From positions 310,001 to 374,000 of the forward strand of contig NW_020846122.1 in the NCBI RefSeq assembly GCF_003704095.1: 64,000 nucleotides of DNA, given 5' to 3'. Source of the stretch: Pocillopora damicornis. Lineage: Eukaryota. The notes under the pieces are model-generated. The model saw only the letters and a program-made list of their open reading frames with translations, did no database searches and had not been told where the DNA came from. This document shows positions 3,254-24,777 of this stretch, one piece after another. Every line of letters starts with the position of its first letter. The stretch's first letter is position 1. A program made the translations under genes and the position numbers.

Positions 3254-5802
3254 CTACTCTGACAAGTTGAGATGGCTACTGGCTGTCCATCTACTGATAT
3301 GCTGCGCGAAGACTCTGTCAAGAAGAGAAAAATGAAGGGAGCGAGAGAATTAAAAGATGTTCCCATATCAACACTTACTGATCCCATAGCTACAATTTTT
3401 AAATAAACAGTTGATTCCATGTTGCCGTGCCTCTGCTCCGTAACAGATCACGCCTGATGTCAAAATGTGGTATGAACATAAATATGGCACGCTAAGCGCC
3501 TCATAACTAGGATATCATTTAATTGCAGTTAAAGCTCCCTCACTTATGTCCAGAAATGCACGCAGTCGCGAAAGTGGCAGATTTGACGAAATTTCGTCAA
3601 ACGGAGTGAATGTTCGTGGATTTGACGATTTTGGGGAATTTTTAGTCAAGATCGTCAAAGCGAAATCAGCTCGGCGGAATTGACGGTTTTGACGCATTTT
3701 CACCATTTTCGTTACTGCATGCATTTCTGGATGTAAGTGAGGGGGTTTTAACTGCAATTAACTGATATCCTAGTTCTGAGGCGCGCCTTGTGCGCCACAT
3801 GTTTATTCTCTCTTTTTTTTACTTCATCTGCGATCTATTACAGAACAGAGGCATATGGCAATATGGAATCTATTTATTTAAAAATAATAATCTTAACGTA
3901 CATAAGATATATTGCGATAAATAGACCTAAATGTGTAAGCCAAACACCACTCTCAATTTACTAAACGCCTGCCGAGTTCATTTCTGCTTCACTGAACTAA
4001 AGGTAATAGTATCATTCAGCATCAAAACATAACTTTTAACGTCTACGACATGTCTCTGTGAAACTCACCTTCTTTCCATTTTTTGAAGCCTTTTAAAACG
4101 CTCTTTATCTTCATCAGTGAGATTTCGTCCTGGTGGACTTTCATCCGCAAATCTTACTCGAAGTTTTCTAGCGAGATGCTCCTAAAACAAAGAAAAAGTC
4201 TTGATAATTTAAATTTTGTAAAGGCGTAAAAACTGGAATATGGAATAGTGGTGAATGAGGTTAGACTCTAGATTAGATATGATTGGTTTAAAAGATAAAT
4301 ATCAATAATAATCATAGATTAATTGGTTGAGTAAACCAGTTTTCTAGATACGATTTTTCCCGATGATTACATCCACACTACGACATTTACTGTACTATTA
4401 TCTCAAAACTATTAATTCAAAATTTAAAAGCATTTTTGAGTAAGTAATGGAAATTGCATGAGTTCCAGCTCATTTTATCGGCACGAGTGATCTTTTGAAA
4501 GCTTTGGAACTGGACGAGTGCAATTTGAAAATATTTCAAAACATGGCTTAAAGCACGAAATCACAAGGAGTTCAAGCTGTCATCTATGCATTTTATTAGG
4601 AACAAAATCACTAGCCAAAGGGAATTTGTACGACGTCGCTGCACGTTACTCAACAAAATAGTTTTCAGCGCTTTAGAAAATGCTTCCACGTTAACTTTAT
4701 GACGATAGCTGTAACACACAAATCGAATATGAAGATTTTCAAAGTTTTTTTTTTAAGTAACATTGTTCAGCTTCAGCTTCAATTTCGAAGAAGTGCACTA
4801 CAGAAATCCGATCTTGCCATCCATAATCTATCTATGCATCGACCAATCAAGAACGAGAATTTTTGAGCACAAATCTATGGCTTTTTAAGTTCGTTTAAAG
4901 GTTTCTTACTCAACCAGGGAGATCCGAATTAAATTTCAAAACGTCTTACCGATTGTCTGCGGGTTGTCTCGAAAGTCTGTGACCTCCTCACGTGGTCAGT
5001 CGTAATCTGAGATTTTGGTTGAATCTAAGTGAAAATCAGCAACACTGTGTTATAGTGACTGTCAGCCTCAGTGGTGAATTCTCAACAGAGAGAGAATGCA
5101 AACCCGAAAAAATGAATAATGACTTGGAAAGAAAAATAACTAGGTTTATTGCAGAAGAAAGAGGAACATAGAAACTCAAGCGCCCAAAGGAAAGCAGAAA
5201 GAAGGAAGAAGTGCAAGTATTGTTACCGTCTGTCTGGTGGGTGTCCGTTCGCATTGTACTGGGCCGATAGCCATACTCTGTGACTTCGCATTTTGGCTGT
5301 GATTTGACTGATCTGAAGGCGGTTGTACTGGGCTGATAATTGTAATCTGGGGCTTTTGTTTGATCTGCACAAGAATTTGTGAGAATTTTGTGAGATGTTA
5401 TATCATCTGTTCCACCCCCTCTGGAATCAAATAGTCTGTCCCCTCCCCCTCAACCCCTCAGGAATCAAACAGTAGAAAAAAACGCTTGCTAACCTTGGAA
5501 CTTCGGCAAACTTACCGTGGTCTCCAAGAGTTTTTTCCTTTTCGTCTCCATCTTCTCGCTGTCGTAGAATTCATTAATCAGATGATTCTGCAACATCTGT
5601 AACTTGGGCAGAAGCATTTGTTTGAATCCCTGGTCACCAGGCTCCACCTCAAAATCGAACTCGTCTTGCCATTCAAGATCGCCAGTCGGTGAGTACCCAG
5701 GAGACAGAGCGCGATAAAGGTCACGTGTGGGTGATGGCGGAAACTCTTCTCGCACTTGACTTGTAACCACTCTCTGTCCAAGCAAACCAGTTTTTTCGTT
5801 CA
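3254..5802 (-). CDS. Cytoplasmic tail exons of the GAIN-domain gene (5 exons)
   Basis: Phase-matched hydrophilic exons [10 protein letters not shown]...KKLLETT / IKQKPQIT...TRQT / IQPKSQIT...RRQS / [17 protein letters not shown]...MER / [20 protein letters not shown]. Linkage to the upstream exons crosses a 500-N gap. Confidence 0.72.
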
Positions 5803-8800: not shown

Positions 8801-11769
8801 CTATAGTAACGGGTGGGGTAATCTTCCCTTGGGGGTGGGGGTGCAGTACCGTTGACATCACTTTGGAATTTGGACCAAGACCAGTACTGTGGGAAGACAT
8901 AAGTAACTTGTTAGCTAGAAACTAACATTGCTCGTGAGTTGTGTTGAAAGTCATGAAGTTCATATTGATCAATTTAATGTAAAGTCTTACCTGACGTTGG
9001 AATCGGGAAGCAAGTAAGGCAAACTTTTAAAACTGATTGTAGCAACACTCACATCTTTTGTAGCTGAAACATGAACGTAAATATTTTCTATTTAGTTGTA
9101 ACCTTTTGCACCCTGACATCAATATGTATATTCTCCATAATGTTTTCTATACGTTTCCTAAGGTGCTGACAAGGAGATTTTTTTAACAATCAAGAGCTTC
9201 TTTTGTCGGTGAAAAGTTCCTTTATTTTTCTGACCTTAATGTTTGATTCAGGGGTGTTATGGTAAGGATAAATTAGATGCCAGTCCCTCTCGGGGGTTAA
9301 AGAGTTAAATTTTAAGATGAATCACACACGCATTTTGATTGGTTCTAACTTGTACTCTATAGGGTGACAGACGCATCGATGACGTCATTAGTAAAATTTG
9401 GCTTTTTTATCATAGCAAACAAATAGATTCCATGTTACAAAGTCCAGTGATAACAACAGTGACAGACACGGCTGCACCTCGTGTGTCACATGTTTGCTCT
9501 TAACAAATTTTGACGTCATCTGTGATCTATTACTTAACAGATGGATGGCAACATGGAAACTATTTATTAATGGTACCATAGAAAATAGGCTTAAAGGGAA
9601 CTGATGTATTCCATTCCTTAAACATGGACTTACTTTGGGCAAACACAGAGGACGGAAGGGCAATGACGTCATGTCTCGCATCCCAGCGATTGACTCTTGG
9701 ATTAGCAAAGTCTGGGAAAGTAAGACCATCATCCCCTGCAGACTTTCTGTCCATCTTAATAACTATTAAAAAATGAAACAATTCATTAACTGAAAATGGT
9801 AGAAAGATAAAGAGGTAGAAGTCAGATTTCTAACAGGAGATAAACAAATGGACAGGTGTACTGTAAGTAAGGACGGACGAACTGCTTTATCAAGTTGGCA
9901 TCCATACACAGATGTCATTCGCGTGTGCTGTACGGTATGTTATAGAAAATGTTGGTCATCAGGGATTTGTAGATAAATGAATGTTTAATCGTTTCTTTCA
10001 TGATTTAAGGTCAGGCTCTCAATTGTTTTTACGTGTCCTATTCATATCAAAGGTATGTGGACAAAACTAGAAGTAGAAGATTATGGGTAAGGTGAAAGTT
10101 CGCTTTTACCGCATTCGTACCCGTTATTCTTGAACTCCTGAAATTTAATAGCCTTTGCTTTGTAAATGTAACTGAATTGCTACGGAAAAGAATTTCTAAA
10201 GATGACTTGGTCAGCGTTAGCCCTTCGTCAAACTTCTTGATAAATTCAAATTATATAGATTATACAGCCAGACTGATAGACAGACAGGAATTATCCTCAG
10301 CCGGGAAATCTTTGAGTGGTGGATATCCCATTCCTGTTAACGGTCCATCACGCGGAGGGATTGTGGTTCTTTGCTTCGTGATAAACCGAGAAAAAATGGA
10401 AATTCTGAGAAGCGATCTGGGCCTCTTTAAGTAAACCTGACTCACCGATATTGTTAGTGATGGTAGGTTCCGCCATATCTTCTCGGGAAAGACGTCGTGC
10501 CGCTTGAAGTGCAAACATTTCCATGGCTCGCAGAACATCCGCTGACCCCGGTTTATTCTATAACAATGCAAATATCAGTTCATGATTCACTAGGTAGGCA
10601 ANNNNNNNNNNNNNNNNNNNNNNNNNNNNNNNNNNNNNNNNNNNNNNNNNNNNNNNNNNNNNNNNNNNNNNNNNNNNNNNNNNNNNNNNNNNNNNNNNNN
10701 NNNNNNNNNNNTTTATTACCTTTTGGATATTGAACCATTCCTGCTGATTTGTCATATCCAGGAGATTACTGCTGGCTCTTACAAAATTCTGATCAGAAAT
10801 GTTGATAAATTATTATCAATTATGATTAAAAAAAAAACAGCTTTTAATTGCATTTCTTAATTTGTGAAATCTAAATAAGAATATTAAATAAATAAAGTAA
10901 TGGATAACAAAGATTTGTATCTTTCAGTCTTTTTTCTTTTTCTCTTGTTTGTATTTCTGCGGTTTAAAAAACACCAATGTTAAGTTCAGACTCTTCCTCA
11001 GTCTTTCCTCCAAAGAACTTGGCGAAAACGCATTTTATCAAAGAGTAGTTAAAAAAAGAGATTCTTAGCATACTTTGCACTCCCTAACGTGATATAATTG
11101 ACATAACTTCTCCCCATAGTTTTAACAACCAGGCATTGAATAGGTTTGCTTTATTTCACCGTTATTTATCAAGCTCGGTTTCGACATCTCGTATCATATC
11201 ACTTTCTCAACCACATCAGGTACAAAATTTAAACCGATCACCGCTTATTCTCTCGCGTCTTCCCGCGCCTCAGGCACTTGTCTGTTTCGTGGAATTCTCA
11301 TTGGCTGCTTATGATATATTCCATTGTTTTAATCGGCCATTGGGATCAATAAAGTTTTGATTTAATGACTCGCTATCGAAATGTGTTTCACACTATGCTA
11401 ACAAAATAAACGCAAACAAAGTTGGCGAATAATGTATATACCTCTACATCCTCTTTGGTCATCTCTAAGAATTCAGTTTGTCCGTTATGCTGTACTATAG
11501 CGGCCATAATATCTGTAGCTCGGTTTAGGTCTCCTCCGAATATCAAGGAATTGTCGATGTTCTGGGTTGTCAGCTGTGACAGTTCCCGTATGAGTGGGCT
11601 GGGGTCAGCTCCAGCGGCAAGCTTTCTAGACTGCAAAAATTTCGAAAGGTTTAAATGCGGAGTGGTTGGAATAATCAGTTTTAAACACTAGGTTTATTGA
11701 AAACTTAACGTCGATATGAGCACACCAGATTTAAAGCTGAGTTATAAGTTGGTTTTAGTAGGGAAAGCC

Positions 11770-11803
<34 letters not shown>

Positions 11804-14800
11804 ATATAACAGGGTAATTTAGTGTTATCAACTGAGTTGATAACACCAATTGGCCATCGTAAAGAGTTTAAAGGCAAGACTCTTTACGGTGGCCAATTTA
11901 CGTTATCAACTCGGTTGATAACATTAAATTACCCTATCATTTGGTTTTATCAACTGAATTGATGGTGTAAATTGGCCATGGTGGAAAATTCATGTTATTA
12001 ACTCAGTTGATTTAACCTACTGAATTATCTTGTAACACTCCCACCGACGCATGCGCAGCACCACAGTTTTCTTTTATAAACCAGCCCCTTTATAAAAGCT
12101 CAGTAGTCCGTTTCGATATGAGGTAAAAAGAACTGTTTTAAATATAGCATAAGCGGCTTCTCCATATCCTCGGTGTAAAGGAAGGGCTAGAAGACATACC
12201 CAGACCTTAAACTCCGTATTTCACCGCACTTATCATTATACCAACACGTCCTCTGCAGGTCCACCTATAAAATCGAACTTCTTTATTTTGCCTTGAGAAT
12301 TCAAAAGTGTTGGGAATGGATTCACTGTGGTCAGAGTATCCCAACATGCGCCTCAGAATATTGTTTTACCTTGTCATAGAGATCTTGATAGCCATTGGAC
12401 ACACAATCACTGAAGTCAGGCGGCATCCATCTTGAATCAGCTTCGCAACGCCGTCTTACAAAACCTAAAAGGTTTAAAAAAGATCAACGAAACGATCATT
12501 ACACGAAATGCAGATATCTGTAGTTTGAAATAACAATAACAATGGTAAGACAGATCATGTGCATCAGTTTTTCTATTCAGAAATACCTTTTGCGCCGCGT
12601 GGGCATGGATGGGCAGAGAAACGCCCAGCAATCGTTTTCTTCCACAATATTCCAAGAGCCTTTTCCATATCACAGACTTCGCGAATTCCTAAAATAAAGA
12701 CAGAGGAAAACGTCCTTTTTATGTGATTACTTAAGTTGTGGCGATGATATTGTGACCGAATGAGAACAAAAAGCTTTCAGTGAGCATCGAGAAGCGAAAT
12801 GGTGCAGAAGCATTCAACAAGCGTCTCGTCATACAACATAACAATTCCACTCGTTTCCAGTTACACAAGTAACAATACATTAAAATAATTTATATTAATT
12901 GTGGTTTAAGGTTTGAAATAGACGACACGTTACTGCAACAATAGCAAATGCGGAAGTAGTGATTAAAATAAGGTCTGAAAAATAATAAGGCTTCAACAGA
13001 ATTCAATACCTTGACGGTTAAAGGTCTAAGGTTCGATAAGTAAATCTTTTTTCTTTGTCCCACCTTCGTGAAAAGACAAAAAAACCTTTTCTTGAGTAAC
13101 AATCATTTAGAGGTCTGCTGCGTAATAAAATTACCTGAAGGAGAGACTTTGTCGTCCCATTCATCGTTCCCATCTTGATCTTGATCGTCTTAAACAGAAA
13201 TGATTTAGTGCTTAGGATCTGTGGTCGTATGCGACCTTTACTTTAACTCTGTAAAAACTTTGCATCCCCAAAAAATATTTCATAAAAAGATTTCGATGAC
13301 AATTGGTTACCTTTTTCTTCGTCACTTAAATGCCTTTTCACAAAACACATCCGAGGACTGAATATATCATCCAGGGACTCGGTGGTCTTGCACGAATCTT
13401 TATCAAAGCAGTTTACGAGAAAGCAAGTCTCTGCAGACTTAAAAGCCAGGTCGCATGTCTTCGTCTGACAGCACCTCTTGATACACATCTCGAAGTCGCC
13501 CACGTCGCCAATGTTGGTAAAGTTTCCCGCCTTTTTCCCTCGCAGTAAAGTGACGTCGTCTGTTGTCTTACCCGCCATGCAAATAGGAGCCCGGTGTTTC
13601 CGATGTTTCTTTCCTGTTTCTGTTTGAAAAAATATCGGGTTAGCTAAATATAGAAGAGAGTAAATTTTGAGCTCGAACGTTTTAAAATCCCAGTAGTACA
13701 TAGAAAGTGCGCCCCATATGAGCCTAATTATGACGCGGCTCTCCACAAAGATCTCTGTAGCTCAGTGGTAGAGCGTCAAAGCGCGGATTTCGGAAGTATG
13801 AAGTTCGAATCGCTAGGGGGAGTCTTAATCTTTCTTTGTCCACGAACGTGAAAAAACTAGAAAAACATTTTAATTTAAACCAGGTAAGTTCTGAACTCAA
13901 ACAATCTACTTTTTACAAGAAAACTTTCTTGGGTTTCCAAAATAAAAAAATGCGTATACTTCCTATATAGCTTTTTTCCTAACAAGAAAACAATCAATGC
14001 TATTCTCAGAACTGTCTCCTGACACAAGATTACTTTAGTTTCATTATTCCACCATTGGTGGCCCTGTTACAGGCATATAACTCGTACAAACTGAAACAAA
14101 AAAATCAACCGTAGGGGCTAGTGAGACCTAGTTTGCTTTCTTCATTCTAATCTCATCTTCCACCTATGTGTAACAGGTTCATGAATCAAAGGGTGTGTGG
14201 AGGATCCTGACTCAGGTAGCATAACAGAGTCAAAACATCTACCTGAAGAATCATCGGATTGAGAGACGTCTCCAAAGTTTGGTGCTGCTGCTGGAGTGTG
14301 TTCAGTGGTTGTCTGAGTGGTTGGCTTGGCAGTAGTTGTGGAGCTCTTTAGTGTGGGCGCTGTAGGCTTGTTGGTTCGATTTCCAGCCGCCTGTTGTGGA
14401 TTGGTACGATCTCCTGTCGTTTTATTTGTGACTTGGTTGGAAGGAGGTTTGGGTGGGGTATTGGTTGTTTGCGGCGTTAGACTGGCATGCTGCGAGGTGT
14501 TTCCTGTAATAATGGGGGACGGGTATAGCTTTAGGGACCAGAACTTAGAATTTTAGAGTTTCTGGAAAGTATCAAATATTTAAGGTATAAAGCTTTCTTT
14601 GGTCAGGAAGTACTCTACCACTGAAAGATAATCATTATACTTCGTCGAATAGGAACATAAATGGGAAAGAACGGAAAGGAATTGATGGTATATTGACACA
14701 AGCAGTCTTCTACATTGGGGCTCTGGATTTAAGTAGATGAAAAATAATACAATGCTCTACCTTGAGAACTTGTATTTTTTTCAGCTTGTCGATCCTCGCT

Positions 14801-17800
14801 CCTATTCGCAGGCCGTAAGATCTCTGACTTTTTCTTTCCATTTTTTTCTTCGTTGAAAAATCCATCCAGGCGGTTTCTATCTTTCAATTGATCCGTGGTG
14901 GTCAAGTTTGTCTTGGGAACTCCATCTTTGTTGGTAGTCGCATTGTGCAATATGTCTTGTTTGACAGTGGGAGCAACTTTGCTTGGTCGAAGGCCGGAAG
15001 TTGATGGAGGAGTGTTCAACTTATCCATAATTTTTTTGATCTGGTTGATATTTGTTGGGCCTGAAACTTGCGATGAAGAACCAGCTGGGTATTTCGGGCG
15101 ATTTGTAGGGTGAAACTTAGTCTGATTAAAAACTTTATTGAAGTTTTGTTGAGCAGGAGGAATATATTGTGATTGAACTCCTGTTGATTGTTGTCCACCA
15201 TCCTGCTTGGTTGCATTGATATTTCTCCACCGCTGCAACCCAGGTGCGGATGGGTTTCTCTGTGGTCCGTAACCACCCTGTTTTAAGTGAGGAGGGGGCC
15301 CATTTTTACTCCAGTCATTGTATTGTTTTTGGTTTTGATCCTCGCGCCCTGCGTGTCCTTGACTAGGATATTGATCTGAGGACCAGTTATTTTTCCCAAA
15401 GCTGTTTTGCGTCTGATCGGGTGGCTTCCACTGTGGATTTGTTGGTTGCCAACGGTTTGATGGATCTTCAGGATAAGGGGTAGGTATCGGTGGCATGCCA
15501 TTGTTGTAGTAAAATTTATTCCACTGGAAGTCTACAGGTTTGTTATCTTGAGATGCTGGCCAAGACGATTTTCTATTCCAGTGCTCGTTATGCGGGTACC
15601 ATCTAGAAGGTTTCGGTCTCCATCTATCATAGTTACCGTGGTGCTCTCTACGCCATTCAGAATATGAACGAAATTTAGACCTTGGCTTATAGTATCCATA
15701 TGGAGCTCTAGAATTGTGATAGTTGTAATTATAATAGTAGGGGTTTTGATTTCCATTACCCCAAAATTCATAGCTTTGCCTATGCTTACGATGTTTGTGC
15801 TTATAATGATTACGTCCCTGGTATTCCTGATTACCTTCACCACCATAATATTGATCGTCATCATCATTATTAGCATTGTAAACGCGCATCGACGCCGAAG
15901 AATCAAACGGGCCCCCAGTACCCTCAAAATCGTGTTGGTCTTTCTCATAGAAGTGATGGTGGTTCTTCCGGTGCCACTTCTTCCAGTGCCTCGGCTTGTG
16001 TTTGGAACCATGATCATAGTGCATCTCGTGGTCTCTGTTATCCTCGTACGGTTTCTCATCTTCATCTATCAGCCGGTGGTTGTGCGCTTGTTCATGTCTG
16101 TATGGAACATCTCCATTTTCATACTTATTCCCTTCAAAATCTTCTTTATTTTTCCACGCAACGCTATCGTCTTCAGGAAAGTGATGAAACTTTTCGTGAT
16201 GATGCTTTTTGTGTTTCTCTTCTCCAGATTCATCATTTGGTCTGCGTTCCTCAATTCTATCACGAGAGGGAATCTCTTCTATTTCCTCACGCTCTTTTTG
16301 ATAATCAGGGATATGTTCATCGATATGTTCCAGGTTTCTTCCATTATCGTCTTCGTTATTCCTTAAAGGATCCCGTTCATATGCTTCCTTATGCTCGTTA
16401 TGTTCCCTATACTCTTCTGTCGTCTTGTCATTTTTCCATTCCGGGCGTTTATGATGATAATGGTACTGTTTATGACTCCTTTGAAATTGTCTTTCATGGT
16501 TATCATTATTAGTTTCTTCATTTTCACCTTCTGCTTCATGATATTCCCTCCATTCCTTCTTCCTCTCTCTGTGATAAATCTTGGATTTTCTGAAATTTCG
16601 TCTATCATGTTTCAAGTTATTCTCCGCCTCAACGCCAAAATGATCACTATTATCATCGTCACTTGCCTTAGATTCAAAATGAGATTCATGGTGCTTGTGT
16701 CTAGATTCCCAATGTTTATGGTAAAAATGAAGTTTGTGATATTCCTTACGATTTCTATTTTTATGATACTCTTCCTCGTTGCTAGCATGTTCTTGTTCAT
16801 GGTAGTTGTGCTTATTCCAGTGTCCGTCAGCATCATGACTTTCCTCTGTTTGATTAGCTTCGTCTTCGTCCTCGTCTTCGGAATCGTCCCCTAAAACTAC
16901 TCTATTATTTTTCTTTCTTTCACTACCGTCGCTATGGTCATGTGCATTATCTTTGTCTTCCTCATTAACTTTGTCGTTGTCTTCTACCTCATCACTGTCA
17001 TCCTCTTTTTCTTCTTGCTTGTTTTCAGAAGATTCATCGGAATCATCGCCATTATCTTCATCGTGAGATGCCCTATGCCGACCTTTTTTAACCACTTCAT
17101 AATTTACGTCTGTTTTCTCTTCTACCCTTTCCTCTTTTTTCTTGTGAGTGTTCCCTCTGTGACTTGTTTGCTTTTTATCATTTTCGTCATCGTCATCACC
17201 CTCATGATTGTCATTAGATTTTTCCTTAAAATGTTTTTGCAGTTTTCTATTTTTAGTATCCTCGTCGCTATCGCTGTCCATTTCGTGCGCCTTAAAGGAA
17301 TTTTTCCGGTTATGGTGATTTTCTCGTGTTTCAGAGCGGTCATCATCGTTTTGAATTTTATGCTTGTGACGGTGATAATGTCGCTTCTTGGCATGGTCTT
17401 TGCTATACGTTATTTTTACTCGTCCAGGAATAACTTTTCCCTGCCAATGATTGTCATCATATTTTATTTTGGGTATATGGTCGTGATCCTTATGCTTATG
17501 GTGGCGTCGATGTTTCATCTTTTGATCATCACTTGAACGATCACTTTCGTCTCGTTCAACATGGTGGTGTTTTATATGCTTCCTAGCCTCCCTGTTATCC
17601 TCACCATCTTCTTCGTTGCTTTCCTTCTTTTTATGATGCAGATGTCCCTTATGTGCACTATGATGGTGATTCTCGTCTTCGTAGTCTTTCCGTTCCACAG
17701 TATTGGCATTATCATGATGCCTATGGTGATGACGCGATTTGCGCTCAGCATTTCGGTGACCATCTTCTTCTCTGGAGGTTCCCTCTTCATCTTCCTCGTT

Positions 17801-20800
17801 GGCATCTTTATCCTTTTCCTTGTGGGAATGATGATGGTGTCGATGGAGTTTGCCTTTGCTCGTTGCCTCACTTTGGTCTTTCTGTTTGTAGAACGATCCT
17901 TTAGCGTCATCATCTTCATCGTTACCATGGGAGTTGTGTTTCCTCTTTTTCTCTGTTCTACTATTATCATGGTTTTTGTTGCTTTTACTTGCATGTTTTT
18001 TATCTTTTCCCTTCGACTTCTTGGGTAAGTCCTTGTGAGGAATATCATTTGACATCATTATATCAAAATCAGCGTCTCCTAAGTCGTCCAAATCAACAGT
18101 TAAACGGTGCTTACTGCTAAGTTTATGGTGCTTTTCACTGGATTTAACTGAAAAATCGATACCATTACTACCACCACTATCGTTCACAAAATGACCCACG
18201 AACGTAGCCTTGGCGTCAGAGGCGTTGCTGTTGCTGCGTTGCTTTGCCGATATATTTACGTGGGAAGTATTTGTTTTTAAAGTATTTATGAATTGATGGG
18301 GCGAAAATGTAATGTGGGAGACAAATGAACGGTTTTCTTTAGAAGATAAGCTCCCTTCAGTAGAGGACAACATAAGGTCTTGATGAATACTGCCTTTTGA
18401 GTCCTTTATACGGTTTCCTTTCTCTGAGGTCGTGGTCGGTAGATGAAATATCGGCGCCCTCCGTCCATGCATACTATTTTGCTTCTTATGTGCGACATGA
18501 GGTTTTCGATGAAAACGCGGAACGTTGTTTTGCAGTGAGTCCTTTGGACTGGTCCCGTACTTTTTATCAACTTTCTTATGAGCCATTACTTTTATCGATG
18601 AACTGACTTTCTGTGCCGTTTTACCTTCAACATTGGAGCCGTTACGCCCGGCTATAACTTTTAGCGTTGTTTTATGCCTAACGGACACTTTCCGATGGGC
18701 ATATTGCATAAGATCACCAGTGTCCTTTATTGTGTAGTTGACATTTGACAACCTACTTTTCGTTTTCGTGCGACCCACTTTTTTGTTTCGCAATGTTGTA
18801 GGCTTCTCATTGTTTTCTGTCAAGGGTTTAACTTTGCTTTGTAAGCGGTGGCCTCCCTGGAATCCCACAAACTCTAGAGATTTCCGTTTCTTTTGGTTGA
18901 TTGCTTGATAACCCTTTCCCATCGATTTTTCCAGACTGGCTTTGCCATTAAGTTTTACCTGTTTTGCTTGATAATTCACAGTCAAGCCCTTCGTTGATGG
19001 TCTATGTGAAGTCGCATTGTCTCCTGTTCGAATGACCTTAGCTTTTCCTTTGCTACGGCGGCTAATTGATTTACCCTTGCGAACTATTCCCGTAGACATT
19101 GCTTTAGGAATAATCTGTGACGCCGTAGAGTTTGCTGCATTTCTGTTAACCTTGTTCCTTTTGATGATTATATTATGCTTATTACCCTCATTCCGTGCTC
19201 CATGAAAGAGCAACGGCTTAGTAGCTATGTCTGCAACGTTGTCTTTTGTTTTCATGAGTCGCCCAGACGAATTTCGGTCACTAGGCTTGGTGTGTTTCAC
19301 TGTGCTATTGACTGATTTCATCTTCGAACGCTTGTGCCCATCTTGAATTCTTTCCTTCCTTACCATCTTGTTGGTTAACAGTTCTGTCCTACCATAATTT
19401 TTCCTTTTCTTGGGATTTAACTTAGCTCTGACATTACTTGCTTTAACATCATGGCTTTCCGGTCGCAATTTACGTGATACTTTGGAACTTGATTGGTTCT
19501 TTATTTTACGAGACTGTTTTAAATCAAAGTGAACTTTCCTAGATTTCATTCTTTTATCTTTTCCTTTTTTGGTGTTCGGGTCCTTCTTTATACCAGACAC
19601 TATGACACGAGGAACTTTTACAACTTTCTTCGAGGTTTGCTTACTATGCACGCTGCTCTTATCTCCATCTGATCCAAGTTCTTCCAAATCTTTAATGAGA
19701 TCAATCTTTTTTCTCGCCATGTTCCCGTTTTTGTCTTCTCCCTGATACAATTTTGGCTTTGTTACATCATGATTTATCTTATATGGCCCATCCCCTTCTT
19801 CCGTGGAACCTACTTCACTTTTTCTACCGTTTTTTCCACTTTCATCTGAATTTTCTGCATATCCACCCACTCCAATATCACTTCCACTCAGGTCGGCATC
19901 ACTCAAATGATGTTCAACCGAACCATCGTCTCTCAGCACCTTAGCATTTTCCATTAAATCACTGCTATGCTTGCTCGAATCGCCACCACTACTATTCAAA
20001 TATTCATGGTTCCCACTCACATCGTCTTCGCCTACTCCACTGAAATCATCATGTACACTGAATCCATGTTCTTTATCGAAATATCCCTGATCTCCACTGA
20101 TATCGTCAAATCCACTTACTCCACTGAAAGCATTATGTCCGCTGAATTCACGGTCTTCTCCAGAATATCTGTGATCCCCACTGATACCATCAAATCCACT
20201 CAATGAACCTTCATCAACACGAGAGTTTCCTTCGTCCGTCCCCCCCACTAGACGTGCAGTGGACCCCTTGTGATGAGTATCGAGCCTTTTCGTACCAATT
20301 TCAAAACCTCTATCGCTTATTCGTGATACCTTTGAACTTTTCCTGCTGGGTTTCATCGCAGTAGTTGTCCTTGTAATTAGCTTCAGATTTTTGACATAAT
20401 GCTTTCCTTTAGGGTTTTCACCAGTTTCTATACTTTGAGTTCCTCGTCTGGTTTCAGCAGCCTTCCAAACTTTTACTGTTGGCTTTATTTTTGTAAATTT
20501 TCCACCTTTAGAGGGGCTCACCCTTTGCGCGAGTGTTGAGCTTAAGTGTTTCGTCAAACTTTTGTTGTTGGAATATATTTTGAATGCTCTGTTTTTGGAA
20601 AATGAAGGAGTCCCTGAAGGAGTCCTTCTACTTGCAACGCCTTTGAAATGAAATGGTACACCTTTTGTCTTAATATCCTTAGTAGTAGGAAATTTGGGAT
20701 GCTTAGTTCTTGATTGATTTGATAGATTTTGTTCATGCCCCATAGCAGTGGGCTGTGCCTCATGTTTTGTAGGTCCCATTGTCGGTATCCTCTTTGAGAA

Positions 20801-23800
20801 TACACTCTCCTTGGCTTTTGCGATTGTTTTTTTTGTATTTGAAAATATTTTGCCAACCTGTGACGTTTGTAGGTTGCCGTTGACTTCAGTTGGCCGAAGC
20901 CTAGGCAGTTTTGTATCTGACGACTTTATATCGCTGTCGTCGGAACCTATATCATCTGGATCTTCATCTCCATCATCCAAGCTTCTAGAAATCTCTGAGA
21001 GAAATAAATTGTTCATCAGTAAATCCAAATTTATACGCAAATGGTAAAGAATTTTACCTTTCCGTGGTACCAAGCAGTTAAAATACGGTTCAAATATTCT
21101 CTACCTTCGACGTTATTTGTCAGAAAGTCTATGGAGGGTCTGCTAAAAAAGCGGCGATGTAATTATAATGCTCAACAATATGCTGTGAAAATCGATTAAA
21201 GAACAGATTGATGCTTTTCTGAGTTCTATCTTGTATGTTTGTATAAATGGCTGGGAATTTCACCAGCTTTCCCACTACAATACAAACCCTCGAAGCAGAA
21301 TTAAAGCATATAAACACAGAAAAAGTGTCTTTGCTTTATGCTTTTTGCTTTTTTTTGACGATAACATCTGGTATTTTCTTTCTGGGGCTACTTCTGTTTG
21401 CTTCATTGCTTTCGTAGTGCGATATAAATATATATTCAATATCGAAAAAGAGCTTTGCCTTTAACCGCTCTACGGTTTGCAACGATATTGCACGGAACTC
21501 ATATTGACTAACCTTTATTTCGATCAATAATAGCGATTTCTAAACCAAGCGTAGGTTCTCGTGTACTATTTGTGCTGTTGCTATCAGCTGGTACACCAGT
21601 AACGCCATAACACTCTTCATCTTCGATGAAAGAGAGCAAGCATTCACGTGATCTACAGCACTGCGTATTGCATTGGCCTTCATCTTCCGACTGCTGAGAA
21701 AATTTGTAAAACTCGCGAGTTGTTCTGGCAGGGAGGAGAAGGACATGAAAGCTGGGTACAAAGCGTTTTGGACACCTCGGGTTGGTGACTTGTGACGTGT
21801 GCCTGATAAAGTCTGTTGTTCCTATAAGTAAAATTCAAATATAATTTCATTGAGTCGTAGTGCTAATATCCAATAATAAAATCAAAACGGGTAAGAAAAT
21901 AATACGTTTGTGACACGAAAAAGACTATGGTTTATAGGAAATAAAATTGTTGTTTGGATTCCATTTAGGAATAAAATCATACGTCAATAAATGCATGCGT
22001 GTTGAGCTTAACCAGGTAACCCTGCTATTTTATGTGATTAAACTGGTAGCTAGCAGCTGTCGACGGTTATCTTGCAGTGCTTTACTTATCGGTGGCAGAG
22101 AAAATTAAAGGAGGTTTCTTTACTAAAAGGCACTTAATGATTTAATTACGAGACTGTAAGAGTGCTCATATTCTCTAGGTGTCAGGAGAGCAGAGGTGGG
22201 ATTTTTCATTTGTAGACGATCACGATGCACCACCTGAACCGGTGTCAATTAATAATTTCACACCAATGTCGAAGCGTACTGGTGATAATAATTACTTTTT
22301 ACAATTTTATGGTATCCTATCGAAACAAAAGGAGAGGAATGGGGTAGACATGTTTGGGATTGGTTAGCAGTTGAATTTAAATCTCAAACTAGGCGATGCG
22401 CTGACGATGCTTAGATACCAAAATGAATAAAGTACTTATCGGTAGACTTCAAAAAAAGCCTGGCGTATTAAGTTTATTTAGTCACTCTTTACGTCTAGCG
22501 TAGGTTCAGTCTTTTGATTTATGTGCGATTTACAAGAGAATTCAGGTCCTACCCGAGGACAAAATTTCGGTATTAGACAGGTTGCATTTTATCAAAATGT
22601 CTTTCAACTACAAGAATTTTAACGCATACATCAAAATATTTGGCACACTCGTCTGTTTTAGGATCACCTCGAACCGCTTCGTTAGTCCTGGAGATCCTTG
22701 AGACGTGTGTTTGAGAGATTTTGTATAGTGCCACCTGTCCGAGCGATAAAATCCTTTCAAAATATTTCACGCAATTTAGCATTTCAATAACACTTTCACT
22801 TGAATAATTTGCACTCTGGCGTGTTTTTCTTCGCAAAGCAAAGTACAAGCCCCCTCAAAAAGCGCGTACATTGCCGTCCGTCTGAGGTTAAAATCTGCAA
22901 TCGTTTATTCTTCCTAAAGTAAGTCTTTCTACGCCAACTGATGAAATAAAAGTAACCCCATCTAACCGTCGTTTTCAACCTTGAAATTCGACCAAATATT
23001 ACAAGGCTTCAAATATGAGAGGAAAAATAGAAACCTAACGCATCCAGAAAATGATCAACAAAGCCTTCGAATGTCGAAAACGTCAAGTGACTTAAATATT
23101 TAAGAGACTTGAAATGTCTTGCAAAAGCCTTGAACAACCCAATCCAAAATGTTATCTTTTAAGATTCCATTTTCCTCATCTTCACGGACGTTTTGATTCT
23201 TTTAATTCCTTGACGATGGCACTCGAAATCTGAGCCTCTTCGCCAATTTTTTTCTTTTGTTCCAAGAAATGTTTATCTGCTTGATTAATTTGATGTGCTG
23301 CAGGCCAAATGTGTACTTTTTGTCGTTTCTGACACTACTGGCAATCGTATAGACTAATCACAATAAGGCTGTGATTGCTGTGGTTGACGTACGTGGAGCA
23401 GTTGGGGAAGGACTGAATTGAATCAAACGATAACTTAAACCTTCCCAGCGTACTGGGGAAGCACTGCATGCACTCATTTTAAAGAAGTCTTTACGTTTAT
23501 TGAAATGAATCAACAACCGAAACATTTTTTATTGTGACGATGAGGAAACTTAATCAGTTTTTCTCCGTCTACCCTCTGGAACGTCAATGAAAAAAATCAA
23601 ATGACAGTTAGCGCTTCGCTTCAAGACACGAGTTGGTTTTTCTTCCACTAAACTCACCTCAAATTGGCATATGGAGTTTTTTGGAGGACGGAAAACCGTG
23701 AACCCGTCGGAAAACATTATAGCTATGACGAGAACCAACAAAAAAACGTGATTTGAAGAGGGAACACCTCTTGGATAAGATCATATACGCCTTTTCCTCT

Positions 23801-24777
23801 CAGAACGTTATATCACAACATAACTAATTTTGCTTCACAAACTTGGAAGGTAATTTTAGGATTTTTAAGGTGACGAAGAGGAACAAGTTGATACATCGGA
23901 CTTAAAATTATGAAGTTAACTTAGGTCACACGTAAATCAAACTTTTCTTCACACTTTCCTAACGACAAAGCAGAACTATAAGTTATGTTGCATGATCTGG
24001 GTATGAAGTACAAAGTCGAAGTTTTAAGCAGGACTAAGAAAATTATTATTGTACTCTCTTTTGCAAAACGATTTGATACATGATACTTATTTTTGAAAAT
24101 AAGTAAATTAGGGCTTGAATATTTTGATACTGTCGAGAGAGAGAGAGAGAGAGAGAGAGAAAAGATATTGTCTTGTTACCGTAAACGTGGTTGCCCGGAA
24201 GAAATCACGCAAGAAAGTTTTAATCAGAAATCAAAATGATATACGAGTTTGTTGTTTTAATTTTTGTTTTCTAAAGCTGGTCAATTTTATCAAATATTTC
24301 ACCTGCATTTCTTGGGTTTCGCTGCAGCTGTCTTTCATCTTCCATTAACAATTTGTCCAGTATCTTGTGGCAAAGTTTCGGCTTGTCGCATGAAACACCA
24401 TAACAATGAAAACCGCGCGAAAGTATCGCCAGTTCGCACGCATCATCTCTACAACATATATCCACACAGTCCTCTAAACCCGTCACGTTTCCAAACTTGC
24501 GGAAATTAAACGAGTTCCTTTTTGCGGTCGATTGCTCTCCCGTGCACGAGTTCGACTGGAGATCGTTGGCCTCTGAGTAAAAATAAAAACAAACGATTGG
24601 AAACATGAAACAAAGTTGGATCTTAACGTAAAGAGCGAAATCCCTTGATGATCACGATTGTATCGAGGTAGTTACAAACAGCGATTCTTTACCGTGGCAT
24701 ACGGTGCATACTGCAAGGAGCCCCAAAATGAAAACATGTGTCCGAAAGCCGTAAGCATGTTGTGTGAATTCCAACAT
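3254..24777 (-). CDS. Giant adhesion-GPCR-like (HRM-GAIN-GPS) protein with three MANEC-like modules, a ~2080-aa low-complexity ectodomain and a single visible TM helix; multi-exon gene, about 3130 aa
   Basis: Phase-consistent GT-AG exon chain: 24777-24693, 24572-24303, 21821-21513, 20994-14761, 14503-14243, 13619-13311, 13188-13135, 12688-12587, 12464-12370, 11630-11442, 10788-10720, 10557-10446, 9762-9634, 9063-8991, 8886-8784, 8438-8392, 7961-7835, 7665-7559, 7228-<7185 (runs into gap), 5802-5516, 5364-5227, 5024-4950, 4181-4069, 3314-3254 (TAG). The GPS motif CVFWD...WSSRGC...[13 protein letters not shown] is unmistakable. Confidence 0.88.
3398..3883. mobile_element. Nested foldback MITE (outer palindromic family around an inner element 3541-3739)
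   Basis: The arms gattccatgttgccgtgcctctg..taactaggatatca..taattgcagttaaa..cacttatgtccagaaatgca are mirrored at the right end. The outer family recurs at about 9380-9570 and 62670-62900. Confidence 0.75.
6037..6249. mobile_element. MITE with TIRs GAGGGTCTCAATGGGG/CCCCATTGGGACCCTC and flanking direct repeat AGACAT
   Basis: TIRs and the 6-bp direct repeat (6031-6036, 6250-6255) are visible; internal ttacggctaacggttaa repeats; partial related copy at about 2370-2490. Confidence 0.8.
6685..7184. other. Assembly gap (500 N) interrupting the first post-TM exon of the GAIN gene; other gaps at 10602-10711, 27385-27573 and 46863-46962
   Basis: Runs of N. Confidence 1.
7303..7514. mobile_element. About 210-bp TTAA/CCCTT-ended MITE (piggyBac-like non-autonomous family)
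   Basis: Ends taacccttt...gaggattaa; close inverted relative at 9098-9308 and related elements at 8548-8759, 52431-52630 and 54712-54925. Confidence 0.65.
7559..7665 (-). CDS. Transmembrane helix exon directly after the GPS
   Basis: [36 protein letters not shown]; the next exon continues [14 protein letters not shown] (positive-inside, polar). Confidence 0.85.
7835..11630 (-). CDS. GAIN domain including GPS autoproteolysis motif (8 exons)
   Basis: [13 protein letters not shown]; [17 protein letters not shown]; [17 protein letters not shown]; FKSLPYLLP; [19 protein letters not shown]; PKCVFWDY; [17 protein letters not shown]|SNFAVLM. Confidence 0.93.
8078..8200 (+). mobile_element. Degenerate tRNA-derived SINE fragment
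   Basis: tggcagagtg..gcgctggactcaggatcgag..gggctcgaacctggacc..cagtgcctct..gttataaatggg, with A/B-box-like head. Confidence 0.45.
8548..8759. mobile_element. piggyBac-like MITE copy
   Basis: Reverse complement of the 52431-52630 element; ends gggggttaaaagggataa. Confidence 0.6.
9098..9308. mobile_element. piggyBac-like MITE copy
   Basis: taaccttt...gggggttaaagagttaa; inverted relative of 7303-7514. Confidence 0.65.
11755..12092. repeat. Foldback repeat built from the ttatcaactcagttgataa / ccgacgcagcaccacagtttctttagaaact family
   Basis: Terminal inverted arms (aagaaactgtggtgctgcgtcggtgggag / ctcccaccgacgc..gcagcaccacagttt) and nested internal palindromes; a single-arm relative lies at 39194-39351. 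Confidence 0.75.
12370..12688 (-). CDS. Hormone-receptor (HRM/HormR) domain, two exons
   Basis: [32 protein letters not shown]|[22 protein letters not shown] matches the C..W..T..G......CP....G...R.C....W..PD.S.C pattern of adhesion GPCR HRM domains. Confidence 0.88.
13311..13619 (-). CDS. MANEC/PAN-like cysteine module 3
   Basis: [67 protein letters not shown]; 309-nt phase 1-1 exon. Confidence 0.85.
13690..13872 (+). mobile_element. tRNA-derived SINE-like repeat
   Basis: A box tagctcagtggtagagc and B-box-like gttcgaatc followed by tail tttctttgtcc..cgtgaaaa; the tail recurs at about 13020-13093. Confidence 0.55.
14243..14503 (-). CDS. Thr/Pro-rich mucin-like stalk exon
   Basis: [21 protein letters not shown]...[18 protein letters not shown]; phase 1-1. 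Confidence 0.8.
14761..20994 (-). CDS. Giant 6234-nt exon encoding a ~2078-aa intrinsically disordered extracellular region
   Basis: Lies within the 2114-aa ORF 14729-21073; acceptor tctcag at 20995, donor G|gtagag at 14760. Contains Ser-Gly repeats, a Lys-rich block, a His/Asp/Glu-rich block and a Tyr/Trp/Asn/Gln/Pro-rich block, with no Cys. Confidence 0.92.
21513..21821 (-). CDS. MANEC/PAN-like cysteine module 2 (degenerate; not in ORF track)
   Basis: Open 309-nt phase 1-1 exon: ...PRCPKRF...[29 protein letters not shown]... Confidence 0.8.
24135..24160. repeat. (GA)n microsatellite
   Basis: About 13 GA units. Confidence 0.9.
24303..24572 (-). CDS. MANEC/PAN-like cysteine module 1
   Basis: [45 protein letters not shown], with C-x3-CC-x4-C spacing; phase 1-1 exon. 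Confidence 0.8.
24693..24777 (-). CDS. Exon 1 of GAIN-domain gene: signal peptide
   Basis: Reads [28 protein letters not shown] with a hydrophobic core. Its phase-1 donor G|gtaaag joins in frame to exon 24572. Confidence 0.75.

What the first reader, a model, noticed from the sequence alone, without database searches (positions are those of the whole stretch)
14761..20994. 6.2-kb single exon encoding a charge-blocked, ~2080-aa cysteine-free disordered ectodomain
Seen: one uninterrupted exon organised like a block copolymer. In order: basic Ser/Thr/Lys block, acidic Ser-Gly repeats (~20210-19850), very Lys/Arg-rich block (~19640-18450), His/Asp/Glu/Lys polyampholyte block (~18050-15930), then an aromatic/polar block (~15860-15130). 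It is flanked by MANEC-like modules. Inference: an extracellular coacervate, adhesive or mineral-interacting tether attached to a self-cleaving receptor. In a coral this could link cells to skeleton, mesoglea or mucus and act as a force sensor.
Basis: partly seen in the sequence, partly recalled or inferred. Interest (0 to 1): 0.8.

Follow-up and report, generated by a model that had tools for sequence, protein, structure and literature searches.

The report
Giant disordered tether exon, GAIN receptor
One 6.2-kb coral exon encodes a 2,077-residue floppy, cysteine-free, charge-patterned extracellular linker of a self-cleaving surface receptor. A skeleton-less sea anemone has the same exon, so it is an old tether and not a skeleton-building device.

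Summary
Window 14761-20994 (minus strand) is one internal coding exon of 6,234 nt, phase 1-1, with AG/GT borders, no stop codon and no cysteine, and with the charge blocks in the order described.

MANEC-like modules flank it on both sides. The gene (24777-3257) matches unnamed NCBI models in Pocillopora, Stylophora, Acropora and Montipora.

It also matches Nematostella vectensis LOC5517900. There the region is again a single exon (2,274 codons), in the same gene position and with the same block order.

Across 24 orthologous exons only one cysteine falls among about 55,000 residues. dN/dS is about 0.4-0.5, and AlphaFold2 predicts disorder. Only one stretch of sequence survives from coral to anemone: an invariant 16-residue motif, DLGDADFDI(M/Q)MSNDIP, at the boundary between the basic half and the His/acidic half.

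Best reading: an ancient extracellular tether, spring or polyelectrolyte arm that joins two distal MANEC heads to a GAIN/GPS single-pass receptor. A skeleton-specific role is not supported. The anemone has the exon, and the Stylophora ortholog is absent from a published skeletal proteome. Coacervation and adhesion remain untested. No earlier follow-up of this stretch exists in the scan.

The parts
24694..24777 (-). Exon 1a: start codon and signal-peptide-like hydrophobic N-terminus (borders approximate)
   Evidence: tblastn of Pocillopora verrucosa XP_058963348.1 (P0028) aa 1-28, followed by an in-frame 120-nt intron that holds a stop
24301..24573 (-). Exon 1b: distal MANEC/KIAA0319_N-like Cys module 1
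   Evidence: Pfam KIAA0319_N 27.9 bits (cut-off 27), MANEC 21.2 bits; tblastn
21513..21822 (-). Exon 2: distal MANEC-like Cys module 2; ends in phase 1 (AAA G|gt)
   Evidence: 100% tblastn match to P0028 aa 119-221; sub-threshold KIAA0319_N/MANEC/PAN_3 hits; donor read
14761..20994 (-). The giant exon: 6,234 nt, phase 1-1, 2,077 whole codons, 0 Cys, 0 stops; a disordered, charge-blocked linker
   Evidence: RNA contigs cover it and splice its 3' end at 14760|14502
20318..20992 (-). Block 1 (aa 1-225): short acidic start, then basic Ser/Thr/Lys-rich
   Evidence: net charge +27 at pH 8.1
19793..20317 (-). Block 2 (aa 226-400): acidic Ser-Gly block with 12 acidic-context Ser-Gly sites in 200 aa; candidate glycosaminoglycan attachment cluster
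   Evidence: the cluster of 9-12 sites is kept in most scleractinian orthologs but not in Nematostella or L004
18293..19792 (-). Block 3 (aa 401-900): Lys/Arg-rich polycation, net about +84 at pH 8.1
18023..18193 (-). Conserved island (aa 934-990) at the boundary between the basic half and the His/acidic half
   Evidence: The only significant BLASTP match between the coral exon and the Nematostella protein, E 4e-10 and collinear; alignment A1
18038..18085 (-). 16-residue motif [16 protein letters not shown]: invariant in the 24 orthologous exons except a conservative D-to-E change at the first residue in most orthologs, I for L at residue 2 in one lineage (P0021-P0024), and Q for the first M in Nematostella
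   Evidence: short helix with pLDDT 75-78 in an otherwise low-confidence model; a profile search of 1.84 billion proteins finds it only in this family; single copy in the genome
15893..17992 (-). Block 5 (aa 1001-1700): His/Asp/Glu/Lys polyampholyte; computed net charge +46 at pH 5.5, about 0 at pH 6.5, -44 at pH 8.1
   Evidence: His runs of 3 or more enriched (7 against 1.9 expected)
15143..15892 (-). Block 6 (aa 1701-1950): Tyr/Trp/Asn/Gln/Pro block; Trp and Tyr are its best-kept residues
   Evidence: W 0.85 and Y 0.69 identity among distant orthologs; AF2 mean pLDDT 41; lowest dN/dS of any block, 0.23
14762..15142 (-). Block 7 (aa 1951-2077): Ser/Thr/Lys/Asn tail with two short conserved helix-prone islands ([15 protein letters not shown] and [20 protein letters not shown])
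14244..14503 (-). Exon 4: Ser/Thr/Pro-rich mucin-like stalk
   Evidence: tblastn; RNA joints 14760|14502 and 14243|13619; acceptor read; no Pfam hit
13303..13623 (-). Exon 5: membrane-proximal MANEC/KIAA0319_N module 3
   Evidence: Pfam 40.4 bits; RNA joints
12370..12689 (-). Two HRM (hormone receptor motif) exons (12585-12689 and 12370-12465), preceded by a 55-nt micro-exon at 13134-13188
   Evidence: tblastn; RNA joints 13311|13188, 13134|12687, 12585|12462 and 12370|11630; Pfam HRM on orthologs
7829..11633 (-). GAIN and GPS exons (GPS at 7829-7972, with the CQCSHL|SNFAVLMD site in the orthologs); an N run at 10602-10711 was left untouched
   Evidence: tblastn; Pfam GAIN and GPS on P0002 and P0028; N runs listed
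3257..7668 (-). Transmembrane exon (7558-7668) and cytoplasmic-tail exons down to the stop codon; an N run at 6685-7184 was left untouched
   Evidence: tblastn; the P0028 sequence shows a single hydrophobic segment after the GPS

Best explanation
Window 14761-20994 is an included internal exon of a hexacorallian surface receptor. No listed NCBI isoform skips it.

The protein runs in this order:
- signal peptide
- two distal MANEC/PAN-like Cys modules
- this 2,077-residue disordered linker
- a short Ser/Thr/Pro stalk
- a third MANEC module
- HRM
- GAIN/GPS with a canonical HL|S site
- one transmembrane helix
- a cytoplasmic tail of about 270 aa

Shown:
- The exon is real and spliced to the receptor exons.
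- It is extracellular by topology, predicted disordered and non-repetitive.
- It is kept free of cysteine and under moderate purifying selection.
- Its length, single-exon structure and block order predate the split of stony corals and sea anemones. The order is a basic S/T/K half, the invariant 16-mer, a His/Asp/Glu/Lys polyampholyte, and a Trp/Tyr/Pro/Asn/Gln block.

Inferred mechanism: the linker is a long polyelectrolyte tether and entropic spring. At 2,077 residues x about 0.37 nm its contour length is about 0.75 um, while the relaxed coil would span only tens of nm.
- It holds the distal MANEC heads far from the membrane.
- Its oppositely charged blocks and conserved aromatic 'stickers' give reversible self-association, or association with polyanionic matrix or mucus.
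- Its His-rich block changes sign between secretory-pathway pH and seawater pH.
- The invariant motif docks an unknown partner.
- Pulling on the distal end would be passed to the GAIN domain and could separate the cleaved fragments, as in adhesion GPCRs. Here the output would be a single-pass stub and its tail.

Cysteine exclusion fits a long unfolded chain in an oxidising compartment, where a free thiol would cross-link.
For: Exon and frame.

RNA: in four polyA or RNA-seq runs from three studies, single contigs run from inside the exon across 14760|14502, 14243|13619, 13311|13188, 13134|12687, 12585|12462 and 12370|11630, all with GT..AG ends on the minus strand. Four intron bins show essentially no depth in all four runs: 12800-12999 and 13800-13999 read 0, 12000-12199 reads 1.88 in one run, and 14000-14199 reads 0.35 in one run.

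Architecture: Pfam finds KIAA0319_N/MANEC, HRM, GAIN and GPS, and no 7tm_2, on the orthologs P0002, P0028 and P0048. The window's own flanking exons hit MANEC models.

Orthologs: Stylophora XP_022793143.1, P. verrucosa XP_058963348.1, A. millepora LOC114975600, Montipora, and Nematostella LOC5517900. All listed NCBI isoforms are longer than 3,000 aa, so none skips the exon.

Nematostella: the linker is one exon of 2,274 codons at the same place in the gene, with the same block order.

Cysteine: one Cys falls inside about 55,000 aligned exon residues of 24 orthologs. Seven more lie past the donor site, in intron read-through.

Selection: dN/dS is 0.48 at dS 0.028 and 0.40 at dS 0.72, and 0.23-0.65 by block.

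Disorder: no Pfam family matches. Mean hydropathy is -1.62 and no TM-like segment is present. AF2 gives pLDDT 57 and 41, with pTM 0.14 for both models, and only short helices at the conserved islands.

Charge and stickers: charge blockiness z=14-24, and the His-block charge flips from +46 to -44. Trp and Tyr are the best-conserved residues.

Motif: invariant apart from three conservative substitutions and found only in this family among 1.84 billion representatives.
Against: - No protein-level, localisation or cell-type data were reachable, so every functional step beyond the anatomy is inference.
- The 5' junction (exon 2 to the giant exon) and possible exon skipping were not examined in reads. 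The exon is phase 1-1, so skipping would keep the frame.
- The AF2 alignments were shallow (6-7 sequences).
- GPS cleavage is assumed from the motif only.
- The complex prediction of the motif against MANEC3-HRM-GAIN gave no answer.
- dN/dS of 0.4-0.5 is weak constraint. Much of the chain may matter only through its length and composition.
Confidence: 0.55

Rival explanations
1. After GPS cleavage, the N-terminal fragment that carries the exon is shed and acts as a material. Its polycation and polyanion blocks and its aromatic stickers would drive complex coacervation into an adhesive, mucus or matrix phase.
For: - Strong long-range charge segregation (z=14-24) and a pH-switchable His block.
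- Conserved Trp/Tyr stickers with variable spacers.
- A clustered acidic Ser-Gly block that could carry polyanionic GAG chains next to an 84-charge polycation.
- A canonical HL|S GPS site that would allow release.
Against: - No proteomic or expression evidence.
- The Nematostella matrisome supplements held as text contain none of MANEC, GAIN or KIAA0319, a weak negative.
- One membrane-anchored gene copy with ordinary RNA contig depth (about 10-18x, which is no measure of expression level) does not look like a bulk structural secretion.
- Unlike most adhesive or cement proteins, it has no tandem repeats.
Confidence: 0.15
2. A glycocalyx brush or proteoglycan core. The exon would mainly carry glycans (GAG chains on the Ser-Gly cluster, plus O- and N-glycans) and work sterically, as a hydrated spacer, lubricant or barrier on the epithelial surface. 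Any signalling would be secondary.
For: - 12 acidic-context Ser-Gly sites lie within 200 aa, and the cluster is conserved in most scleractinian orthologs.
- 24 N-x-S/T sequons.
- Ser+Thr is 19-24% in the N-terminal half.
- A true Ser/Thr/Pro stalk follows in exon 4.
Against: - The Ser-Gly cluster is absent from Nematostella and from L004, so it cannot explain the ancient conserved part.
- Sequons are not enriched over shuffles (24 against 20.3).
- Pro is only 4% and there are no PTS tandem repeats.
- The His/acidic block has only 5-10% Ser+Thr.
Confidence: 0.15
3. A skeleton- or mineral-interacting tether of calcifying cells, that is, a calicoblast or desmocyte anchor to aragonite.
For: - Sub-blocks reach 37-39% Asp+Glu, which recalls coral acid-rich proteins.
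- His/Lys clusters resemble surface-binding segments. This resemblance is from my own knowledge and was not tested.
Against: - The same exon, block order and motif exist in skeleton-less Nematostella.
- XP_022793141/3 and PFX24105 are absent from the accession tables of the Stylophora skeletal proteome paper, although those tables are in the searched text.
- Nothing comparable is mentioned in the A. millepora skeletal proteome paper.
Confidence: 0.07
4. An essentially passive spacer. Only its length and solubility matter, and the blocks are frozen accidents of an ancient low-complexity expansion.
For: - Sequence identity falls to 25-43% among corals, and to nothing outside one island against Nematostella.
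- dN/dS reaches 0.6-0.65 in two blocks.
- The length of the pre-island half varies from 850 to 2,073 aa.
Against: - Block composition and order are reproduced almost to the percent across all orthologs, including Nematostella.
- Cysteine is excluded from about 55,000 residues.
- Trp and Tyr positions and several islands are invariant.
- The post-island His/acidic segment keeps a narrow length of 600-800 aa.
Confidence: 0.08

Closest known systems
Adhesion GPCRs (class B2), e.g. latrophilin/ADGRL, BAI/ADGRB and CELSR, with an HRM-GAIN-GPS head and often a Ser/Thr-rich stalk
   Same: - HRM, GAIN and GPS are found by Pfam, with an HL|S site followed by a Stachel-like SNFAVLMD.
- A long extracellular region sits N-terminal to the GAIN domain.
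- Automatic annotations named relatives 'CELSR2' and 'ADGRB1'.
   Different: - There is no 7TM domain, only one transmembrane helix and a tail of about 270 aa.
- The extracellular arm is not a chain of folded adhesion domains. It is a 2,077-residue cysteine-free polyampholyte encoded by one exon.
Yeast cell-wall stress sensors Wsc1/Mid2: Cys-rich head, Ser/Thr-rich 'nanospring', single TM and a signalling tail
   Same: The logic is the same: a Cys-rich distal head, a long disordered extensible stalk, a single TM and a cytoplasmic tail. Wsc1 is described as a mechanosensor in PMC7915640. The nanospring measurement is from my own knowledge.
   Different: - There is no homology.
- The Wsc stalk is about 10 times shorter, is a plain O-mannosylated Ser/Thr region without charge blocks, and has no autoproteolytic GAIN domain.
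KIAA0319 / KIAA0319L (AAVR): MANEC-PKD single-pass proteins
   Same: Both have MANEC/KIAA0319_N modules at the N-terminus of a type I membrane protein. KIAA0319 is heavily glycosylated and proteolytically processed (PMC3000997).
   Different: No PKD domains were found here, and KIAA0319 has no GAIN/GPS, HRM or giant disordered linker.
Polycystin-1 / LOV-1 / sea-urchin REJ family (GAIN/GPS proteins outside the GPCRs)
   Same: A GAIN/GPS autoproteolysis module sits on a non-GPCR membrane protein with a large ectodomain. This is from my own knowledge.
   Different: Those proteins have 11 TM segments and PLAT/REJ domains. None of these was reported by Pfam here.
Charged or His-rich disordered segments: titin PEVK, histidine-rich glycoprotein, kininogen domain 5, and sandcastle-worm or mussel coacervating adhesive proteins
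   Same: The resemblance is compositional and physical only: an entropic-spring polyampholyte, His/Lys clusters with pH- or metal-dependent binding to polyanions, and oppositely charged blocks. This is from my own knowledge and was not tested.
   Different: - No sequence relationship was found: Pfam and the ESM Atlas gave nothing.
- Those proteins are repetitive, whereas this exon is essentially non-repetitive.
- PEVK is intracellular.

Membership tests
Adhesion GPCR (class B2) | GAIN domain with a GPS motif next to the membrane | tested here: met
   On ortholog P0028, GAIN scores 95-98 bits and GPS 56 bits; P0002 and P0048 give similar hits. The window exons map to these regions at 86-100% identity.
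Adhesion GPCR (class B2) | Seven-transmembrane secretin-like domain (7tm_2) | tested here: not met
   No 7tm_2 hit in P0002, P0028 or P0048 at E<=0.1. One hydrophobic segment follows the GPS.
Adhesion GPCR (class B2) | Autoproteolysis at HL|S/T | not testable with these tools
   The motif CQCSHL|SNFAVLMD is present in P0028. Cleavage itself needs a protein experiment.
Mucin / mucin-like domain | Pro/Thr/Ser-rich tandem repeats | tested here: not met
   Pro is 4% and Ser+Thr 14% overall. TRF finds only one 2-copy 84-nt repeat. Only exon 4 and the last ~130 aa are PTS-like.
Proteoglycan core protein | Clustered Ser-Gly sites in acidic context | tested here: inconclusive
   The window has 12 such sites in 200 aa, and most scleractinian orthologs have 9-11. 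A. millepora has 4, and Nematostella and L004 have 3. GAG attachment itself cannot be tested here.
Coral skeletal organic matrix proteins (SOMP/CARP/SAARP) | Detected in cleaned skeleton by mass spectrometry | tested here: not met
   The Stylophora accessions are absent from the tables of PMC7115838, which do list 74 XP_/PFX accessions. The caveat is that tryptic MS handles K/R-rich, glycosylated disordered regions poorly.
Coral skeletal organic matrix proteins (SOMP/CARP/SAARP) | Restricted to calcifying lineages or linked to calcification | tested here: not met
   Nematostella has an ortholog with the same giant exon.
KIAA0319/AAVR family | MANEC followed by PKD domains | tested here: not met
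   MANEC/KIAA0319_N is present, but no PKD domain was reported.
Intrinsically disordered region | No stable fold: low hydrophobicity, no domain, low-confidence structure prediction | tested here: met
   No Pfam match. Mean Kyte-Doolittle hydropathy is -1.62. AF2 gives pLDDT 57 and 41, with pTM 0.14 for both models. The alignments were shallow.
Phase-separating sticker-spacer or complex-coacervate polypeptide | Blocky opposite charges and conserved aromatic stickers | tested here: met
   Charge blockiness z=14-24. W identity is 0.85 and Y 0.69 in the aromatic block.
Phase-separating sticker-spacer or complex-coacervate polypeptide | Actual condensate formation | not testable with these tools
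   This needs recombinant protein and turbidity or microscopy assays.

The most novel reading that the evidence does not exclude
The exon would be a programmable extracellular mechano-chemical switch, conserved since before the anemone-coral split.
- Its basic half and its His/acidic half would zip together electrostatically into a compact globule while the His block is protonated, in the acidic secretory pathway or under local acidification or metal binding.
- They would spring apart at seawater pH, when the His block turns net negative.
- This would change the reach and tension of the tether on the GAIN domain.
- The invariant 16-mer at the hinge between the two halves would be the latch or a tethered ligand.

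If true, this would be a disordered polyampholyte acting as the sensing element of a GAIN-type receptor that signals through a single-pass stub and not a 7TM domain.
Probability: 0.12. Interest if true: 0.85.

Novelty: new variant of a known kind. Interest (0 to 1): 0.55.

Why it matters
GAIN-domain receptors are thought to sense force through their extracellular arms, which are usually chains of folded adhesion domains. Here the arm is a 2,000-residue disordered polyampholyte. Its sequence has dissolved over evolution, yet several features have been held since the common ancestor of stony corals and sea anemones:
- its length
- its single-exon coding
- its freedom from cysteine
- the order of its charge blocks
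- its aromatic positions
- one invariant 16-residue motif

That makes it an unusually clean natural case of conserved 'molecular grammar' in an extracellular disordered region. It is attached to a GAIN domain that ends in a single-pass stub with no 7TM domain.

Nematostella is genetically tractable, so the questions can be tested directly. Does charge patterning matter, what binds the motif, and does the GAIN domain release under load?

For coral biology the result is a caution. The gene is not a calcification gene, and acid-rich or His-rich composition alone should not be read as mineral binding.

Tried and rejected
Searches that found nothing:
- Pfam on the whole exon gave no family.
- The ESM Atlas on the His block gave no usable hit.
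- The word-index search with the Nematostella exon found only itself.
- The profile search with the island found 13 hits in 1.84 billion proteins. All are this family, except one spurious 38-bit hit and three short ORFs that look like calls on bisulfite-converted DNA.

Complex prediction: the island against MANEC3-HRM-GAIN of P0028 gave 'no answer', score 0.00. This is evidence neither for nor against binding.

Peptide-precursor idea rejected: there are 0 furin R-x-[KR]-R sites (1.8 expected), and dibasic sites are not enriched.

Hidden membrane segment rejected: the maximum 19-residue hydropathy is 0.53.

Paralog check: the island is single copy in the 234-Mb genome.

Literature:
- No paper holds any of the six accession or LOC identifiers, nor LOC5517900 or LOC114975600.
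- The Stylophora cell-atlas paper and its held supplements do not mention the gene or its domains.
- The Nematostella matrisome paper and its supplements do not mention MANEC, GAIN or KIAA0319.

DNA look-ups for P0002, P0044 and P0043 failed because only the longest isoform is indexed. Isoform X1 of Nematostella worked.

Full report
**1. The observation**

The minus strand carries a stop-free frame of 2,114 codons at 14729-21073. No other ORF in the 64-kb window exceeds about 250 aa.

A polypyrimidine tract and CAG precede base 20994, and CAAG|GTAGAG follows base 14761. Exon 2 ends AAA-G|gt at 21513, and exon 4 begins at 14503 after an AG. The exon is therefore 6,234 nt and phase 1 at both ends, with 2,077 whole codons.

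From position-specific base composition one expects about 85 stop codons and 26.5 Cys codons. Both counts are zero, P(0 Cys) is 3e-12, and 374 codons lie one substitution from Cys.

The exon is essentially non-repetitive. TRF finds only a 2-copy 84-nt repeat in the Ser-Gly block.

**2. The gene**

The word-index search found Stylophora pistillata XP_022793143.1 (3,181 aa, 69% identical over the exon) and a 97%-identical cluster that includes Pocillopora verrucosa XP_058963348.1. The genome has 234.35 Mb in 4,393 contigs. From memory this fits a Pocillopora assembly.

Mapping these proteins onto the window places the whole gene on the minus strand from 24777 to 3257, in about 22 exons. On the orthologs Pfam finds KIAA0319_N/MANEC, HRM, GAIN and GPS, and no 7TM domain. 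One hydrophobic segment and a tail of about 270 aa follow a canonical CQCSHL|SNFAVLMD site.

The window's own exons either side of the giant exon hit the MANEC/KIAA0319_N models, which confirms 'flanked by MANEC-like modules'. N runs at 6685-7184 and 10602-10711 lie inside the gene and were left alone.

**3. Expression and splicing**

Nine runs on record as RNA, among 18 listed runs from six studies, hold more than half of the exon's words. I laid Logan contigs of four runs (three studies; polyA, oligo-dT or PCR libraries) on 11400-17399.

In every run a single contig runs from inside the exon across six joints: 14760|14502, 14243|13619, 13311|13188, 13134|12687, 12585|12462 and 12370|11630. 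All have GT..AG ends on the minus strand. Intron bins 12800-12999 and 13800-13999 have zero depth in all four runs. Bins 12000-12199 and 14000-14199 are zero except for 1.88 and 0.35 in one run each.

All NCBI isoforms in Stylophora, Pocillopora, Acropora and Nematostella exceed 3,000 aa, so none skips the exon. The 5' junction and rare skipping were not examined in reads.

**4. Evolution**

Twenty-four orthologous exon-sized ORFs were recovered, mostly from unannotated coral assemblies. Identity to the window falls from 71% to 25%, yet composition is nearly constant.

Within about 55,000 aligned residues there are eight Cys. Seven lie beyond the donor site in intron read-through, leaving one inside the exon.

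dN/dS is 0.48 against a congener (dS 0.028) and 0.40 against a more distant coral (dS 0.72). By block it ranges from 0.23 (aromatic block) to 0.65.

A domain-anchored search added Montipora, Acropora millepora LOC114975600 and the sea anemone Nematostella vectensis LOC5517900. In Nematostella the Cys-free linker (aa 212-2485) is again one exon of 2,274 codons. It sits directly after the second MANEC exon and before a short stalk exon and the third MANEC exon.

The Nematostella composition profile reproduces the coral one:
- a net-basic, Ser/Thr-rich, His-poor first half (net charge per residue +0.10, His 4%)
- then a His-rich acidic polyampholyte (His 12%, Asp+Glu 22%)
- then a Pro/N/Q/S/T tail

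Only one stretch is alignable between coral and anemone (BLASTP E 4e-10, collinear). It sits exactly at the boundary of the two halves. Its core, DLGDADFDI(M/Q)MSNDIP, is essentially invariant in every sequence seen. The only changes are a D/E swap at the first residue, I for L at residue 2 in P0021-P0024, and Q for M in Nematostella.

The motif is single copy in this genome. A profile search of 1.84 billion representatives finds it only in this family.

**5. Physical character**

No Pfam family matches the exon. Mean hydropathy is -1.62 and there is no TM-like segment.

AlphaFold2 gives mean pLDDT 57 for the island region and 41 for the best-conserved C-terminal 387 aa, with pTM 0.14 for both. 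Short helices appear only at the conserved islands, with pLDDT about 75. This is the pattern of binding motifs embedded in disorder. The alignments were shallow (6-7 sequences).

Computed net charges at pH 8.1 are +27, -23, +84, -44 and +12 for blocks 1, 2, 3, 5 and 6. The His block is +46 at pH 5.5 and about 0 at pH 6.5.

In the aromatic block Trp (0.85) and Tyr (0.69) are the most conserved residues among distant orthologs, which is a sticker-and-spacer pattern. The Ser-Gly block holds 12 acidic-context Ser-Gly sites in 200 aa. Most scleractinian orthologs keep 9-11 there, but Nematostella does not. From general knowledge this resembles glycosaminoglycan attachment sites. It is a lead, not a finding.

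**6. Mechanism**

Shown: a transcribed, conserved, cysteine-free, disordered, charge-blocked linker that is extracellular by topology. It lies between two distal MANEC heads and a MANEC-HRM-GAIN/GPS-TM unit.

Inferred: it is a tether and entropic spring with a contour length of about 0.75 um. Its blocks would give reversible electrostatic and aromatic self- or matrix-association. Its invariant motif would dock a partner. Tension on the arm would load the GAIN domain.

The nearest working analogies are adhesion-GPCR ectodomains and the yeast Wsc1 'head, spring, single TM' sensors (PMC7915640). Neither is a family membership, because the 7TM criterion for adhesion GPCRs is tested and not met.

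**7.

A skeleton link is unlikely as the conserved function because the anemone has the same exon. The Stylophora accessions are absent from the accession tables of a Stylophora skeletal proteome that was searched against the NCBI protein set. The Acropora skeletal proteome paper mentions no such protein.

These proteomic negatives are weak, because trypsin would shred this K/R-rich exon. Coacervate, adhesive and glycocalyx readings remain open and are listed as rivals. A furin-processed peptide precursor is unlikely, with 0 sites.

**8. Novelty**

The gene is annotated only as 'uncharacterized', or mis-named CELSR2 or ADGRB1. No paper in the library holds its identifiers.

I rate it a new variant of a known kind: a GAIN-domain surface receptor with a stalk. 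The unusual features are the single-pass ending, the size and charge grammar of the disordered arm, its single-exon conservation across orders, and the invariant hinge motif.

Interest is moderate to high for researchers working on disordered proteins and adhesion receptors. It is limited by the lack of any functional or localisation data.

Noticed in passing
G000:C2933, about 34.7-47.4 kb and 52-56 kb (minus strand); also C1147 42-59 kb and C247 439-471 kb: The MANEC/KIAA0319_N-like module has at least 75 matches in this genome. One locus has a single open frame of 6,666 aa holding 15 or more such modules, and another has an open frame of 1,601 aa. This is a large expansion of MANEC arrays, some in giant exons.
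   Followed up: no
window 11770-11940 (intron of the gene): A short element with summed RNA-contig depth in the thousands, hundreds of loose ends and many odd joints in all four runs. It is most likely a high-copy, transcribed repeat.
   Followed up: no
P0066, P0067, P0069 (protein library entries): Short 'proteins' that are the conserved island with H>Y, S>L/F, A>V and P>L/F changes throughout. They look like ORFs called on bisulfite-converted (C>T) coral DNA, a database artefact that can pose as divergent homologs.
   Followed up: partly
L008:12143-16272 (Nematostella ortholog locus, opposite strand): Gene models with PAN_1 and fn2 domains are nested antisense in the long intron between the MANEC3 and HRM exons of the Nematostella gene. 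The corresponding Pocillopora intron is only about 450 nt and holds nothing.
   Followed up: no
P0045 / P0063 (ENA assemblies): A paralog-like protein of about 3,600 aa. Several 8-Cys MANEC modules flank a different 2,437-residue Cys-free region rich in Ser/Thr/Asn/Gln. 'MANEC heads on a giant disordered arm' may be a recurring design.
   Followed up: no
Annotation of orthologs (P0026, P0051, P0053): Stylophora PFX24105.1 is named 'Cadherin EGF LAG seven-pass G-type receptor 2'. In Acropora cervicornis the gene is split into 'Adhesion G protein-coupled receptor B1' (971 aa) and a 'hypothetical protein' (1,957 aa). Both names are misleading, because no 7TM or cadherin domain was found.
   Followed up: partly
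window 15716-18028, plus strand: Four antisense ORFs of 155-216 aa lie opposite the His/acidic block. The region has extreme strand skew (AT skew -0.43), so they are most likely by-products of the purine-rich coding strand and not genes.
   Followed up: no
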